Assembly (NCBI GenBank): GCA_000388065.2
Contig: KB932204.1
Length of the DNA stretch: 31,058 bases
Direction: 5' to 3' (one strand)
DNA from: Fonticula alba ATCC 38817
Taxonomy: Eukaryota > Protista > Nucleariida
Part shown: positions 25,876 through 31,058 of the stretch, in pieces
How positions within the stretch are numbered: the stretch's first letter is position 1
Layout: the number at the start of each line of letters is the position of its first letter
Translations under genes and position numbers: made by a program
The notes under the pieces: model-generated
Database searches by the model: none
What the model was told of the DNA's origin: nothing
The model's input: the letters and a program-made list of their open reading frames with translations, nothing else

Positions 25876-27667
25876 CGCACACGCACACACGCACACCGAA
25901 TGATGCCTAAGCGACTGCAGAGGGAAATTGGCGTGAACACGGCGCATGGAGGCCCCAGGGGAATGTTCGGTCATGGCCGCGACCCCTCCCGTCCATTAGA
26001 GTAGGGGCCCCCCCCTGCTGTGCCTGCCTCTCTTCCTCTTCTTCTCTCGCTCCCTCTCCTTTTCCCTCTCTCTCTCTCTCTCCCCTACTTAGAATGCACA
26101 AAAAGACAGAATAGCCCTGGCCTTCTCTGCTGTCCCCGGTCGAGGGGGGGCCGTTCCACTGAGGGTGGACATTTTGGCGGCAGCCGGCGGATCAGGGCCC
26201 TTCCGTTGGGGGATTGACCAGTGGACCGATCCGATGGCATCTGCCCGTGGGAACATCTGTACCCGCCTGGGGAACAAACACACAATCCTCCCGAAGGAGC
26301 GGCAGCCCAGGGGGCGGCGGGCGCATGCGCTCCCACCTCATCAGGGCCAGCCCAAGGGTCTGCCCAGAGCGGCGCCGCATCCGGTAAGTACAGAAATGAG
26401 AGAACCGAGCCCCCCCCCCTCCTCCCGAGGGCGGAAGAAGCCCCGGCGACCGCCCTCAGAGGGGCGGGGGGAGTGGTTGCCGGGCAGGGATATGCTCGGC
26501 AATTCAGGGGCACAGGCCCCGCGGTCGGCCGGCCAGTCATATTTGCCCGAAGGGGGGGGGGGGGGGCGACGTCCGCACGGCCAGCGCTCCAGAGAAGCCC
26601 CGGGCATGTGGCCTGTGCCGGGCGGGCGGGCGGGCGGGCGGGCGGGCGCGGGGCCAAGAAGGCCGATCGATCGGCCGGCGGACGCCGGGCCACGGGGTAA
26701 ACACATCAGATTCCAAATTCTTGGTGCGCCGTGTTCTCCCGAGCACGCTGGGGCGGGGCGGGGGGGCAGGAGGACCGACCGACCGGAGGGGGCCGACGTG
26801 CAAGGACCGGATGGCTGATGTCACATCGGCCCGCACCCATGCGCGCCCTGAGGCCTGGCGCAGGGGCACCGGGCGGGGGGGGGGGGGGGGGGGGGGTGCG
26901 ACGGGGCAATACAGGGCCGAAGTCGGACGCGCGAAGAAGCCCCCCTGGGGCACTCTCGGGGAACATTACAGCCCCGGGGGCTTGAAGTCTGACCGGAACC
27001 GGCACCAGCCGTTGGGAGGTCATACCCCCCCTGCCCCCGCCCCACCTGCCCCTGCCATTCTGGCCTGGGGGGGGGGGGGGGCGACGAGACCCAAGGGGTA
27101 AGGACCCCCCCCCGGCCGTCTCGCGACTGAGCGGCGCCAGAGAGGGAGAGAGAGAGAGAGAGAGCCGTTGGAGGCAACACCGCTCGCGGGTCGCGCGCAT
27201 CCCCTCTCGGGACCAGGGCTGTGTGGCGATCGCCCGGGCCCGCCCCTTCCCCTGGAGCATGGGGGCCTGTCTCCGTGCAGGAGCATTCGCGAGCCGGGCT
27301 GTAGCGAGACTGGTGGATCCGCTCCACAGGGGGGCGGGGAGGGGGGAGATCGTCCCTGCGTCCGCCCCCCCCCCCCTTTCACCGCCGCCACAGGCGGGTC
27401 GAGGCAGATCGTTCGCCCCTGCTTGTGCCGCCTCGCTCGCCCCCTCCGGGGGTGTGGAGGGGTTCTCTTCGGACACCTTGGCCCCCGCGCGGCTGCCTGG
27501 CCAGCCCCGGTAGCCATCTCCTGCCGTGTGCTACCCCATCACCCTCCCCCCCCCCTTCCCTTTGCCTGCTGCCTGTCCCCTCCCCGCCCCCCCCCTCTGC
27601 CCTGCCGCATTTCCGTCCTGCCTGGCTCTGTCCTTGACCGTCCGCCATTTGCGGACCTTGAATCACC

Positions 27668-28625
27668 ATGTCCAAAGGCGCTCCCGGACCCCAGGCGTAT
27701 GAGATGGCCGTTCTCAAGGCCCCACCGTCGACTCAGGCCCACCCGGCAGATCGCCCGGACTTGGGTTTCACCTTCGCCACAATTGAGGTGCGCATCTAGG
27801 CCATCACCGCTGCCTCGCCCGTGTCCCCCTCCTTCAAATGCGGCCTTGCTAACTCGGCACCCTCCTGTCGGGGCTGGCCGCCCCCCTGGCCACCCCCCAG
27901 TCGCTTCTCCGGTGCTTTGCCCTTTTGGACCTCGACGGCGACGGGCTGATCCAGCTGCTTGAGTTGCGGATTCTCTTCCGGGCATTCAAGGTACGGGTGG
28001 CCCTCCCGGCTCGGCAGCCCCCCCCCCCCCCTGCCCGTTAATGACACGGTCACTAACCACCTTCTGTGTTCCTCTGGCAGACTGGCTATGATGAGAACTT
28101 CACGCGTAGCGTGCTCAGCATGTTTGATTTCGATCGCAGCGGCAGCATCGAGCATGAGGACTTCCTTTCGGTGCGCCGCTGTTGCTGTCGACTGCTGCAT
28201 CCCCCCTCGAGGCAGATCGCCCTGACACACGTCCCTCTCTCTCTCTCTCTCTTTCTCTCTCCTCCCAGCGGATGGCCCTTCTTCAGCACCGCGATCCGGT
28301 CATCTTCTCGAAGCTCCTGGCCAAGGTGAACTCGGATGCGGATAACACCGAACTCACTCGGTATACTCTTGGCTGCATGGTCAAGGTCCGGCCTGCTTGT
28401 CTTTCTGCCCCCCTCCGTTGTCCCTTTGATGCTCCTGCTCCCCCTCGCGTCTGTCTTTTGACCCTTTGCCCTTGCCTCCGTGGCCGTTTCCCGCCTCTCT
28501 CCCGCAGCTGGTTACCATCAATCAACTACGCCGGAGGTCCTCCCTCTACGTTCGGGATACACCACAGTGCGTACAATGTCGCCCTTTGGCCAGATATGTG
28601 TGGCGCCCGCCCCACACCGACCCAT

Positions 28626-28676
<51 letters not shown>

Positions 28677-30459
28677 CATATATATGGATTGGCTGACTGA
28701 AAGTCCTGACGCATGGGCAGGTCCACCGGCTCTGGAATCCAGTATCACACCATTAGGGCTGCCAAGCGTGCTGTTGGCCTGGAGGATGTGCGTGCTCCAT
28801 GCGCCTGTTGCCGTCGTCGGCGCCGGTGCTGTCCATGCGCATAGCTGAGAGTACATCTTCCATTTGACACCCTCGACTCACCACCCTCCCCATCCTCGTT
28901 GTACACACATACACACACGCTCTGGGCTGTTGGTGGGCGCCCGCAGAGCAAGACCGCCATGCCCACACATGTGCAGAAGCAACTGGTCGACGAGCGGAAG
29001 CGCACGAACCAGCGTATCCCCTGGTTTTTGTATTTGATCACCGTGGTCCAGGTGGCCATGGTGATCACTTCGCTCTTCATGAACAAGGGCATCCAGCCGA
29101 TCGGAGAGAACTTGATGATCGGTCCAAGCAACCAGATTCTCCTTCACCTGGGGGCCAAGTTTGGCCCCTGCATGCGGCCGGAGCCCTGGGTGGTGGCGGA
29201 GTTCCCCGACACCTTCCCCTGTCCCCCGGAGTATCAGGGGACATACCAGCCGAAGCGTGCGCTCTGCGTGGACCCTTTCCATCCTCTGCCCCGTACTTTT
29301 TTTGGCCCCCACTTCTTTCGACTGACACATACCCATGCGCGCACCCGCACCCGCGCACGCGCACGCACCCGCGCACGCGCACGCACCCGCACCCGCACAC
29401 ACACACACACACACACGCCTGTCCATGTGCGCCAGTTCCCGGAGGCGAGTGCACGTACTACATGGTCCTCGAGGAGAAGTGCGGCATGGGCGGATTCGGC
29501 ATGATGGACAGCATCCCACTCCAGGCGTGGCGCTTTATCACCCCGATGTTCTTGCATACCGGAGCCATTCACCTTATCATCAACATGATTTTCACCTCCT
29601 GGCGCGGGTTAGACATCGAGAAGAAGATCGGCTCCTTCCGGTTTATGATCATCTTTTGTTTGAGTGGCATCTTCGGCATTGCCTTCAGTGCGGCCATGAC
29701 ACCGAATCAGAGTACGTGAGCCCCCATGCTCAGGCCCATGTGTGCCGCGAAGTTCCCTCTCCCCTTCTCCCCTACTCTCTTTATCCCCTGCCCGTCCACT
29801 GATAATGCCCTCCCCCCCCCCCTTCATAGTTGCATGTGGATCATCCGCCTCCCTCTTCTCTTTGCTGGCCATTCTGAAGATCGATCTTTTCCTCAACTGG
29901 CGCGTGGTGCAAAACCCCTGGCGCCACTTGTTCACCCTGGTCGTACGTGGCATGCCCTGTCCATTCATTTGACCGCACATCCTCGCGCCAAGCGATTTGA
30001 GGGCCAAAAGGGGGGGGGCAAGAAGCATGCTCGCCAACTCCTGCCCACAGAAGATGGCAAGAGTACGGGCACGGAAGGGGTGAGCTCGAATGGAAACTGA
30101 CCCCCCCCCCCCCCACACACACACACACACAACGACACCCATCTATTTGACCTCAGGCTGTGGCGGTCATTCTCCTGGGCATCGGGCTTCTGCCATTTGT
30201 AGACAACTTCATGCAGATTGGTGGATACATCGCGGGGATCCTGTCGGCGGTGATCCTGGTGCCGCACATCAAGATTTCGGCGGCCGGGCGACGCTGGCGC
30301 GTGTTTGCCATCATCTGCGCCCTGCTCATCCTGGCTGGCATCTTCTTCGGGGTGTTCTACACCTTCTACGATGGCCAGGAGACCAACTACTGCTGGTGGT
30401 GCGAGGCACTCAACTGCATGCCTCAGGGAACGCCCTGGTGCGCAGGTGTCAGCTCCTGA
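27668..30459 (+). CDS. EF-hand-pair plus iRhom-like rhomboid membrane protein, predicted catalytically inactive; 10 exons, about 514 aa
   Basis: Exons 27668-27787, 27901-27990, 28081-28170, 28269-28385, 28508-28566, 28721-28787, 28947-29256, 29436-29711, 29830-29942 and 30157-30459 join in frame (1545 nt). EF loops: DLDGDGLIQLLE and DFDRSGSIEHED. Rhomboid motifs: NLMIGPS..LLHLGAKFGPCMR, QAWRFITPMFLHTGAIHLIINM, IEKKIG, GLLPFVDNF, C-terminal CWWCEALNCMP...WC. Confidence 0.85.
28627..28684. repeat. Compound (CA)n(TA)n microsatellite in rhomboid intron 5
   Basis: Seen directly inside intron 28567-28720; the only long AT-rich repeat in the window. Confidence 0.95.
29338..29416. repeat. (GCACSC)n hexamer repeat grading into (CA)n, in rhomboid intron 7
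   Basis: GCACCC/GCACGC units followed by ACAC, inside intron 29257-29435. Confidence 0.85.
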
Positions 30460-31058
30460 TGGGGGGGGGGGGGGGGGGGGCGACGCCTGTGTGAGCGTGC
30501 ATCGTGCACCCCTCGCCCCGTGGTATCTCTCCTCTGCCTCCACCGTTGTCGCTGCGTGTCCCCTCCCTGCCTGTGTTCGTGCGCCCGGCCGAGCCGCGGA
30601 GTAGCAGGGAGATGGGGTCGGAAAAAGACAAAAGACCAGGAAAAGAAATACACTGCCCTTGAGATGCAAGTGAAAAAGCGGGGATGCCCTCGGTGTGAGG
30701 GGGGAGGCAGAGAGGGGGCGGGAGAAAGGGAATGTCGCAAACGCCGATTGCCCGGCAACTGCTACTGCGGTTAGTGATGCTCGCTTCAATTAAGCCCGGT
30801 GAAGGCAGGTCCGCCCGCTTTGGCGGGTGGTCGCTTTATGAAATAATATTACCTCCCTTTGCTCGATCCTCTTTGAACGGTGTTTTGAATGATAGTGGGA
30901 TGTTTTAAGTGCGTTGGGGCATGGATCGCGCACCTGGGAAGGTGCGGGGTCCCTGGGAGGGTGCGGGGTCTGGACAGATGCAAGGCCCAGCAGCTGCCCT
31001 GCTCGGTCTCTCTCACTCCCGCCCTCGCTGTCTTTTTCCAACCAGAGTGCCCCCCCCC

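What the first reader, a model, noticed from the sequence alone, without database searches (positions are those of the whole stretch)
27668..30459. EF-hand-fused rhomboid pseudoprotease: a candidate Ca2+-sensing iRhom in a unicellular eukaryote
Seen: the EF-hand ORF fragments and the rhomboid ORF fragments splice into one in-frame 514-aa protein using GT-AG sites typical of this window. The two EF loops look canonical (DLDGDGLIQLLE, DFDRSGSIEHED) and precede TM1, the cytosolic end in rhomboids. The TM6 catalytic position reads DNFMQIGG (CAG at 30214-30216) and the TM4 motif reads CGSSA (29835-29849). Established: active rhomboids need a Ser-His dyad (GxSG and DNxAHxGG). Animal iRhoms are inactive through GPx and keep the His. 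EF-hands are known on animal RHBDL1/3-type rhomboids, which belong to a different clade. The NxMIGP...GAKF.PCM loop with four Cys and the C-terminal CxxC...C...WC are iRhom/fungal-type features. Inference: this is an independently inactivated (His to Gln) pseudoprotease that couples cytosolic Ca2+ to trafficking or ERAD of membrane clients, an architecture I do not recognise as described.
Basis: partly seen in the sequence, partly recalled or inferred. Interest (0 to 1): 0.85.

Follow-up and report, generated by a model that had tools for sequence, protein, structure and literature searches.

The report
EF-hand rhomboid lacking its catalytic histidine
This is a real, expressed Fonticula alba gene for a membrane protein of the rhomboid protease family that carries two calcium-binding EF-hands. 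The histidine its protease chemistry needs is replaced by glutamine, so it is probably an inactive, calcium-regulated "pseudoprotease" — a modest new twist on two known themes.

Summary
A 10-exon GT-AG model (27668-30459, +) gives a 514-aa protein identical to the public Fonticula alba protein H696_02863. cDNA-derived contigs from two RNA samples remove all nine introns in one 1649-nt transcript. Pfam finds an EF-hand pair (aa 40-102) and a rhomboid domain (aa 314-449).

Gln434 (CAG 30214-30216) sits where 93 of 100 relatives have the TM6 catalytic His. Ser382 is kept. CAG is also present in contigs from three independent DNA samples, including a soil and a sediment metagenome. These differ from the reference at other sites, so CAG is not an assembly error or a laboratory-strain mutation.

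Only three close sequences form the clade. The two environmental relatives (about 50% identity) keep His but have GPSG, the iRhom-type proline shown experimentally to disable rhomboids. All three therefore have active-site lesions.

The N-terminal EF-hand is not a new fusion. The moderately supported sister group has it together with intact dyads, and Rho-4 and RHBDL1/3 are known precedents. The loop and tail cysteine motifs are family-wide, not iRhom-specific.

Best reading: a lineage-specific EF-hand rhomboid pseudoprotease. Loss of activity and Ca2+ regulation are inferred, not shown. The scan noted a possible second such gene elsewhere in this genome.

The parts
27668..30459 (+). Complete coding region of the gene: 10 exons, 9 GT-AG introns of 90-214 nt, 514 aa. 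It is F. alba H696_02863.
   Evidence: Splice model. It is identical to P0001, which is named. All junctions lie in one cDNA-derived contig.
27566..27667 (+). 5' UTR, at least 102 nt, as covered by the transcript contig.
   Evidence: record 1 begins at 27566.
27928..27963 (+). EF-hand 1 Ca2+-binding loop, D50-E61 (DLDGDGLIQLLE), in exon 2.
   Evidence: Pfam EF-hand hits. The PROSITE-type pattern matches. The loop aligns to calmodulin loop 1.
28126..28161 (+). EF-hand 2 loop, D86-D97 (DFDRSGSIEHED), in exon 3. Position 12 is Asp rather than Glu.
28269..28787 (+). Exons 4-6 encode the linker, aa 101-180. It is predicted helical at low confidence and has no family match.
   Evidence: One search finds no Pfam family. 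One search gives pLDDT 44-75.
29025..29087 (+). TM1 (aa 207-227).
   Evidence: AlphaFold2 helix H207-227 with pLDDT above 90.
29088..29524 (+). Luminal L1 loop (aa 228-314, interrupted by intron 7). It holds IGPSNQILLHLGAKFGPCM and Cys256, Cys273, Cys290 and Cys300.
   Evidence: These columns are at least 90% conserved in 63 relatives. They align to iRhom1/2 on either side of the iRhom homology domain.
29528..29584 (+). WR motif (W316, R317) and TM2 H325, H330 and N334, all conserved.
   Evidence: Column counts: R 100/100, H325 100/100, H330 96/100, N334 97/100.
29835..29849 (+). TM4 catalytic motif CGSSA. G380-S381-S382-A383 is the GxSx motif, with the serine retained and Gly to Ala at position +1.
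   Evidence: Column counts: Ser in 97/100, and Gly in 83/100 at +1. S382 aligns to the Ala of iRhom GPAG.
30214..30216 (+). CAG encodes Gln434 at the TM6 catalytic histidine position (DNFMQIGG).
   Evidence: His occupies 93/100 of this column. Gln434 aligns to the His of iRhom1 DNFAHISG. The sister sequences have CAC. CAG is present in cDNA-derived contigs and in three independent DNA samples.
30391..30441 (+). Luminal C-terminal Cys-rich tail after TM7 (C493, C496, C501, C509).
   Evidence: Conserved columns. The tail aligns to the iRhom2 tail.
30460..30669 (+). 3' UTR, at least 210 nt. It begins with a 22-nt poly-G run that breaks the transcript assemblies.
   Evidence: records 2 and 4, and the loose ends at 30460-30481.

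Best explanation
The locus encodes a seven-TM (6+1) rhomboid-family membrane protein of the plant-RBL / fungal AN10929-type / iRhom-like secretory-pathway group. Its cytosolic N-terminus carries a calmodulin-like pair of EF-hands. The architecture was most likely inherited from an EF-hand-bearing active rhomboid. In the lineage leading to Fonticula the active site was remodelled. All three known clade members have Met instead of a small residue before the TM6 His, and Ser instead of the second Gly of GxSGxxxG. The two environmental relatives have the iRhom-type GPSG, and F. alba changed the catalytic His to Gln through a single CAC to CAG change. Gln cannot act as the general base of the Ser-His dyad, so the F. 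alba protein is most likely proteolytically dead. The rest of the fold is intact, including the disulfide cysteines, WR, the TM2 His/Asn and the TM6 GxxxG. The gene is correctly spliced and expressed, and the Gln allele occurs in independent samples. This points to a retained non-catalytic function. By analogy with iRhoms and Derlins, that function would be binding transmembrane clients. By analogy with Drosophila Rhomboid-4, Ca2+ binding to the EF-hands would modulate access to the client site. Shown here: the gene structure, a single transcript, the domain content, the substitution and its recurrence in independent samples, and the lesions in the relatives. Inferred: loss of activity, Ca2+ binding and the client-handling role.
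For: - Gene and transcript.
- Domains. The calmodulin N-lobe alignment has E 1.5e-11.
- His column: His in 93/100 and Ser in 97/100. The active-protease motifs GxSx and A/G-H are stated in PMC12615303.
- F. alba departs from only 4 of 49 columns that are at least 85% conserved: Y358F, G383A, G387S and H434Q. Three of the four lie in the catalytic TM4 and TM6 motifs.
- The relatives P0003/L001 and L002 have GPSG plus DNFMH.
- A Pro before the Ser abolishes Rhomboid-1 and AarA activity and strongly reduces RHBDL2 activity (PMC3149277).
- The clade has 100/100 support. It is sister, at 79/91, to EF-hand-bearing rhomboids with intact dyads. EF1 aligns at their N-termini.
- CAG is present with no differing letters in samples X30, X33 and X34, which differ from the reference at other sites. 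Of the four exonic SNPs, three are synonymous.
- Ca2+ activation of Rho-4 through its EF-hands is cited in PMC12615303 and PMC13597478.
Against: - No biochemical data exist for this protein.
- Ser382 and the oxyanion-hole residues are retained, as would be expected if some chemistry persisted.
- The His to Gln change is a single transversion. F. alba's end branch is about twice as long as its sisters' (0.83 against 0.36-0.43), which also fits recent relaxation of constraint rather than a new function.
- The polymorphism sample is tiny (4 exonic SNPs) and does not significantly show purifying selection.
- The N-termini of the two relatives are missing, so it is unknown whether they have EF-hands.
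- The AlphaFold2 model of the EF-hand region is of low confidence (pLDDT 37-55).
Confidence: 0.62

Rival explanations
1. It is still an active, Ca2+-regulated intramembrane protease. Catalysis would proceed with Ser382 and a non-canonical base, or with residual activity despite Gln434.
For: Ser382, TM2 H330/N334, WR and the TM6 GxxxG are all conserved. UniRef's automatic name is 'rhomboid protease'. The nearest EF-hand relatives are apparently active.
Against: The TM6 His is the only general base of the rhomboid dyad (motif A/G-H, PMC12615303) and occupies 93/100 of this column. Gln cannot abstract a proton. No other His lies in the TM4-TM6 active-site segment: H452 lies past the predicted end of TM6 (helix 431-448), 18 residues beyond position 434. 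The sister sequences carry GPSG, which is experimentally disabling.
Confidence: 0.08
2. It is a recently disabled protease with no new function. The gene is still transcribed but is drifting, an early-stage relic rather than a functional pseudoenzyme.
For: One nucleotide change suffices (CAC in the sisters, CAG here). F. alba's branch is about twice as long as its sisters'. Its rhomboid Pfam score (96.9 bits) is lower than that of its relatives (110-137 bits).
Against: The ORF is intact across 10 exons and is correctly spliced in cDNA-derived contigs at word depth of about 100-137. 45 of 49 family-conserved columns are kept, including all eight structural Cys. Both EF loops are canonical, more so than in the active relatives. 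The Gln allele occurs in several natural genotypes, where 3 of 4 exonic SNPs are synonymous and there are 6 SNPs and 2 indels in introns. Active-site remodelling (Met433, Ser387) is shared with relatives at about 50% identity, so it is old.
Confidence: 0.22
3. Gln434 is an artefact, either an assembly or sequencing error or a mutation fixed only in the cultured reference strain.
For: Only one genome assembly exists, and the RNA runs are from the same organism label and year.
Against: cDNA-derived contigs from two samples show CAG. DNA contigs from X30 (2025), X33 (soil metagenome, 2022) and X34 (sediment metagenome, 2025) cover 30143-30421 with no differing letters, yet differ from the reference at up to 9 other sites in the gene.
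Confidence: 0.02

Closest known systems
Drosophila Rhomboid-4 and mammalian RHBDL1/RHBDL3 (EF-hand-bearing active rhomboid proteases)
   Same: They have cytosolic N-terminal EF-hands in front of a 6+1 TM rhomboid core. For Rho-4, Ca2+ activation through the EF-hands has been reported (PMC12615303, PMC13597478). ESM Atlas clusters with EF-hand plus Rhomboid in arthropods and chordates are the nearest by sequence features.
   Different: Those proteins keep the Ser-His dyad and this one has Gln at the His position. Structure-based identity to Rho-1 and RHBDL2 is only 15-16%, against 21-26% to iRhoms, A. nidulans Rbd2 and plant RBLs. The core therefore belongs to another branch. No tree including the animal sequences was made.
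Unnamed EF-hand rhomboids P0046, P0010, P0006 and P0070 (from environmental and unannotated assemblies)
   Same: They have an N-terminal EF-hand at the same place, the same L1 loop and C-tail motifs, and about 30% identity. They are the sister group in the tree, with 79/91 support.
   Different: They have GASS/GSSG plus DNYxH, so the dyad is intact. Their second EF loop is degenerate in most members, whereas F. alba has two canonical loops.
Metazoan iRhoms (RHBDF1/2)
   Same: They are the best solved-structure matches (E 4e-36 by sequence; Foldseek E 1e-14). They share the ENxxIGPS...LGAKFxPCM and C-tail Cys motifs and the 7-TM core, and are predicted pseudoproteases. The two nearest relatives of the F. 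alba protein carry the iRhom-hallmark Pro before the Ser position.
   Different: F. alba has no iRhom N-terminal domain (PF12595 not found). It has no iRhom homology domain: about 26 aa lie where iRhom1 has about 143. It reads GSSA, not GPx. The lesion is in the His, which iRhom1 keeps (DNFAHISG). The shared motifs are also at least 90% conserved in active fungal-type rhomboids.
Sporadic inactive rhomboid homologues inside active clades, such as Arabidopsis 'Inactive RHOMBOID-like protein 8' and C. elegans 'Inactive rhomboid-related protein 2'
   Same: These are independent, lineage-restricted losses of dyad residues within the secretase-type family. Both appear among the Swiss-Prot structural neighbours. 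About 4-5 of the 100 nearest cluster representatives also lack His or Ser: P0061, P0100, P0102 and P0147.
   Different: None of those seen here combines the loss with a recognisable EF-hand pair.

Membership tests
Rhomboid superfamily (Pfam PF01694 fold) | Rhomboid domain above the curated threshold | tested here: met
   96.9 bits against a cut-off of 22.6, aa 314-449.
Rhomboid superfamily (Pfam PF01694 fold) | L1 WR motif, TM2 HxxxxHxxxN and TM6 GxxxG | tested here: met
   W316, R317, H325, H330, N334, G437 and G441 all match the family columns.
Rhomboid superfamily (Pfam PF01694 fold) | Multi-TM rhomboid core fold | tested here: met
   The AlphaFold2 core has pLDDT above 90 and seven TM helices. 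Foldseek matches iRhom1/2 and GlpG.
Active rhomboid protease (MEROPS S54) | Catalytic Ser in the TM4 GxSx motif | tested here: met
   G380-S-S382-A. Ser occupies 97/100 of this column.
Active rhomboid protease (MEROPS S54) | Catalytic His in TM6 (A/G-H motif) | tested here: not met
   The protein reads M433-Q434. His occupies 93/100 of this column. The motif is defined in PMC12615303. CAG was confirmed in RNA and in independent DNA.
Active rhomboid protease (MEROPS S54) | Proteolytic activity | not testable with these tools
   This needs a cleavage assay or an activity-based probe.
iRhom (RHBDF) | Invariant Pro before the serine position (GPx) | tested here: not met
   F. alba reads GSSA. The relatives P0003 and L002 read GPSG.
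iRhom (RHBDF) | Large iRhom homology domain between TM1 and TM2 | tested here: not met
   The L1 loop is about 88 aa. About 26 aa lie where iRhom1 has about 143.
iRhom (RHBDF) | Long N-terminal iRhom1-2_N domain (PF12595) | tested here: not met
   Not among the Pfam hits. The N-terminus is an EF-hand pair.
EF-hand rhomboids of the animal RHBDL1/3 and Rho-4 type | N-terminal cytosolic EF-hands in front of the rhomboid core | tested here: met
   EF-hand_7 at aa 40-102 and Rhomboid at aa 314-449.
EF-hand rhomboids of the animal RHBDL1/3 and Rho-4 type | Phylogenetic membership of the animal RHBDL/Rho clade | tested here: inconclusive
   No animal sequences were in the tree. The Swiss-Prot fold search gives 15-16% identity to Rho-1 and RHBDL2, against 21-26% to iRhom, fungal and plant members.
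Canonical Ca2+-binding EF-hand pair | EF-hand pair above the Pfam threshold with canonical loop ligands | tested here: met
   EF-hand_7 at 35.9 bits against a cut-off of 30. Both loops match the PROSITE-type pattern and align to calmodulin loops 1 and 2. Position 12 of loop 2 is Asp.
Canonical Ca2+-binding EF-hand pair | Measured Ca2+ binding | not testable with these tools
   This needs ITC, 45Ca overlay or DSF on the N-terminal domain.

The most novel reading that the evidence does not exclude
A small clade around Fonticula has turned an EF-hand-regulated rhomboid protease into a Ca2+-gated pseudoprotease, convergently with metazoan iRhoms. Its members show different stages or routes of active-site loss: the iRhom-type GPS proline in two uncultured relatives, and His to Gln in F. 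alba. The client-binding fold and the Ca2+ sensor are preserved. This would be a simple protist model for how regulated proteases become regulated pseudoenzymes.
Probability: 0.4. Interest if true: 0.55.

Novelty: new variant of a known kind. Interest (0 to 1): 0.36.

Why it matters
Rhomboid pseudoproteases such as iRhoms and Derlins are important regulators of membrane-protein trafficking and degradation. How they arise from active proteases is known mainly from animals. An EF-hand-bearing rhomboid that has lost only its catalytic His, with relatives carrying the iRhom-type proline, would be an independent natural experiment. It occurs in a lineage on the fungal side of the opisthokonts. It also flags the automatic database name 'rhomboid protease' as probably wrong. 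The significance is limited. Both ingredients (EF-hand rhomboids, and sporadic inactive rhomboid homologues) are already known, and nothing functional has been shown for this protein.

Tried and rejected
- The first brute-force splice enumeration gave thousands of stop-free combinations and was uninformative. It was replaced by a frame-guided model, later confirmed by the cDNA-derived contigs.
- RNA runs X12 and X6 (organism B) matched only the poly-G and poly-C tracts and say nothing about the gene.
- The word-indexed homologue search found only one close relative, both with the full protein and with the region 230-514. No animal RHBDL or iRhom sequences were obtained as usable ids, so no tree including them was built.
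- The cluster look-up gave no names for the EF-hand relatives or for P0003, so their taxa remain unknown.
- The juxtamembrane DPxVRxQL motif was considered as a marker linking F. alba to the EF-hand group. It was rejected because it is family-wide.
- The Rfam hits in intron 5 (mir-1277 and others) are far below their gathering scores and lie on an (AT)n microsatellite, so they were rejected.
- The literature search for Fonticula plus rhomboid found nothing specific.
- The dyad geometry of the AlphaFold2 model could not be inspected because no coordinates are returned.
- iRhom membership was considered and rejected (see the membership test).
Full report
**Observation.**
Reading 27400-31058 and the six-frame ORF list shows EF-hand-like and rhomboid-like ORF fragments on the + strand. 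A frame-guided model with ten exons and nine GT-AG introns of 90-214 nt gives a 1545-nt CDS and a 514-aa protein. The exons are 27668-27787, 27901-27990, 28081-28170, 28269-28385, 28508-28566, 28721-28787, 28947-29256, 29436-29711, 29830-29942 and 30157-30459.

An exhaustive HMMER search with the exon-8 peptide returned a 514-aa protein, P0001, that is identical to the model. Its sources name it 'hypothetical protein H696_02863 [Fonticula alba]', and UniRef calls it 'rhomboid protease'.

Logan contigs of two RNA samples (X1, X2; 2012) each hold one 1649-nt contig covering 27566-30461. All nine introns are removed exactly as modelled, and no letters differ.

**Domains.**
On the full protein, Pfam gives EF-hand_7 (aa 40-102, 35.9 bits, cut-off 30) and Rhomboid (aa 314-449, 96.9 bits, cut-off 22.6). 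Residues 39-104 align colinearly with the calmodulin N-lobe at E 1.5e-11, and both loops lie on calmodulin loops 1 and 2. Both loops also match the PROSITE EF-hand pattern.

An AlphaFold2 model built on 63 relatives has pLDDT above 90 across seven TM helices. The EF-hand region is poorly modelled. Foldseek matches the model to iRhom1/2 structures and then to GlpG.

**Catalytic residues.**
In an alignment of about 100 nearest cluster representatives, the column of S382 is Ser in 97 and the column of Q434 is His in 93. R317, H325, H330, N334 and the TM6 glycines are conserved, and F. alba has them.

The HMMER alignment to iRhom1 puts S382 on the Ala of GPAG and Q434 on the His of DNFAHISG. F. 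alba departs from only 4 of 49 columns that are at least 85% conserved: Y358F, G383A, G387S and H434Q. Three of these four lie in the TM4 and TM6 catalytic motifs. The scaffold is kept and the active site is not.

**Is the Gln real?**
The cDNA-derived contigs carry CAG. DNA contigs from independent samples are more than 99% identical to the window. These are X29 and X30 (2025, a different organism label), X33 (soil metagenome, 2022) and X34 (sediment metagenome, 2025).

They differ from the window at ten SNPs and two intronic indels, so they are other genotypes. X30, X33 and X34 cover 30143-30421 with no differing letters. Six SNPs are intronic. Three are synonymous (T133, R147, Q191) and one is S310G in the variable part of the L1 loop.

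This rules out an assembly error or a culture-only mutation. It is weakly compatible with purifying selection, but the numbers are too small to be significant.

**Relatives.**
- Only two close relatives were found, both at about 50-53% identity to F. alba and 72% to each other. One is P0003 on a 1108-nt Logan contig (L001). It is genomic and has an intron at the same place as F. alba intron 6. The other is metagenome contig L002.
- Both are cut off at TM1 or just before it, so whether they have EF-hands is unknown.
- Both read TGPSGALFS in TM4 and DNFMHVGG in TM6, with His codon CAC.
- Zettl et al. 2011 showed that a Pro before the catalytic Ser abolishes Rhomboid-1 and AarA activity and strongly reduces RHBDL2 activity (PMC3149277).
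- All three sequences share Met before the His/Gln position, where the other listed relatives have a smaller residue (mostly Ala or Ser), and Ser at the second Gly of GxSGxxxG. The whole small clade therefore has active-site lesions, of different kinds in different members.

**Phylogeny and architecture.**
- In a careful ML tree of 53 rows, the three sequences form a clade with 100/100 support.
- With moderate support (79/91), this clade is sister to a group containing P0006, P0010, P0046, P0070, P0063, P0057 and P0008.
- Four of these have an N-terminal EF-hand by Pfam. P0046 is above threshold and the others are below it. Their EF1 aligns with F. alba EF1, and they have intact dyads.
- The EF-hand-rhomboid architecture is therefore most simply ancestral here, not a new fusion.
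- F. alba's end branch (0.83) is about twice that of its sisters.
- Named members of the wider family are fungal (Neocallimastix, Piromyces, Cryptococcus, the A. nidulans AN10929 type), amoebozoan, Anaeramoeba and plant RBL proteins.
- In Swiss-Prot, the structural neighbours are iRhoms (21% identity), A. nidulans Rbd2 (24%) and Arabidopsis RBL1-8 (21-26%). Rho-1 and RHBDL2 are much weaker at 15-16%.
- The L1 IGPS...GAxFxPCM motif, the four loop Cys and the C-terminal CxWC...C...WC are at least 90% conserved across these mostly active proteins. They are family features, not pseudoprotease marks.

**Known precedents.**
EF-hands on Rho-4, with reported Ca2+ activation, and on RHBDL1/3 are in the literature. 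ESM Atlas clusters with EF-hand plus Rhomboid are common in arthropods and chordates. Independent inactive homologues are also known, for example Arabidopsis 'Inactive RBL8' and C. elegans 'Inactive rhomboid-related protein 2'. About 4-5% of the nearest representatives here lack His or Ser. No paper on a Fonticula rhomboid was found.

**Conclusion.**
The most likely reading (about 0.6) is a lineage-specific EF-hand rhomboid pseudoprotease. Its scaffold and Ca2+ sensor are retained for a non-catalytic, client-handling role, by analogy with iRhoms and Derlins and with Rho-4 regulation.

The rivals are a recently disabled protease with no new function (about 0.2), residual activity (about 0.08) and an artefact (about 0.02). 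It is not an iRhom: there is no GPx in F. alba, no iRhom homology domain and no iRhom N-terminal domain.

Novelty is moderate. It combines two known themes, and both inactivity and Ca2+ binding remain untested. The scan holds an unchecked note (s1-066822) of a possible second EF-hand rhomboid-like gene elsewhere in this genome.

Noticed in passing
window 30460-30481: A 22-nt poly-G run starts directly after the stop codon and breaks the transcript assemblies. Long poly-C runs sit in introns 2 and 8 (about 28010-28022 and 29804-29815) and show length differences between samples.
   Followed up: partly
window 28611-28695 and 29340-29416: Intron 5 holds (CA)n and (AT)21 microsatellites, which give spurious sub-threshold miRNA hits in Rfam. 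Intron 7 holds a CGCACC-type repeat array.
   Followed up: yes
P0147 (Chromosphaera perkinsii, EukProt EP01135_P006336): A 797-aa rhomboid-like protein from an ichthyosporean reads GPNA at TM4 and DNFST at TM6. Pro is present and both Ser and His are lost. It is another independent pseudoprotease with an iRhom-like GP, on a very long branch.
   Followed up: partly
P0002 (Nowakowskiella sp. JEL0078, KAJ1565782.1): This 815-aa chytrid protein has two tandem rhomboid domains, both with intact GASG and His. It is either a real duplication fusion or two merged gene models.
   Followed up: no
runs X29-X35 laid on window 27500-30700: DNA more than 99% identical to F. alba occurs at low depth in a soil metagenome (2022), in a sediment metagenome (2025) and in 2025 runs filed under another organism label. 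It carries about 0.3% SNPs, so natural F. alba genotypes are present in public data and could support population analyses.
   Followed up: partly
another piece of the same genome (scan note s1-066822): A first-stage note reports a possible second EF-hand-bearing iRhom/rhomboid-like gene in this genome.
   Followed up: no
window 26700-27700 and 29965-30789 (- strand): Many long overlapping ORFs lie on both strands, for example 274 aa on the - strand antisense to the last exon. They are what GC-rich DNA (66% GC) produces mechanically, and no evidence suggests they are genes.
   Followed up: no
window 30933-30970: A 19-nt unit (CCTGGGAAGGTGCGGGGTC) is tandemly duplicated downstream of the 3' UTR.
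   Followed up: no
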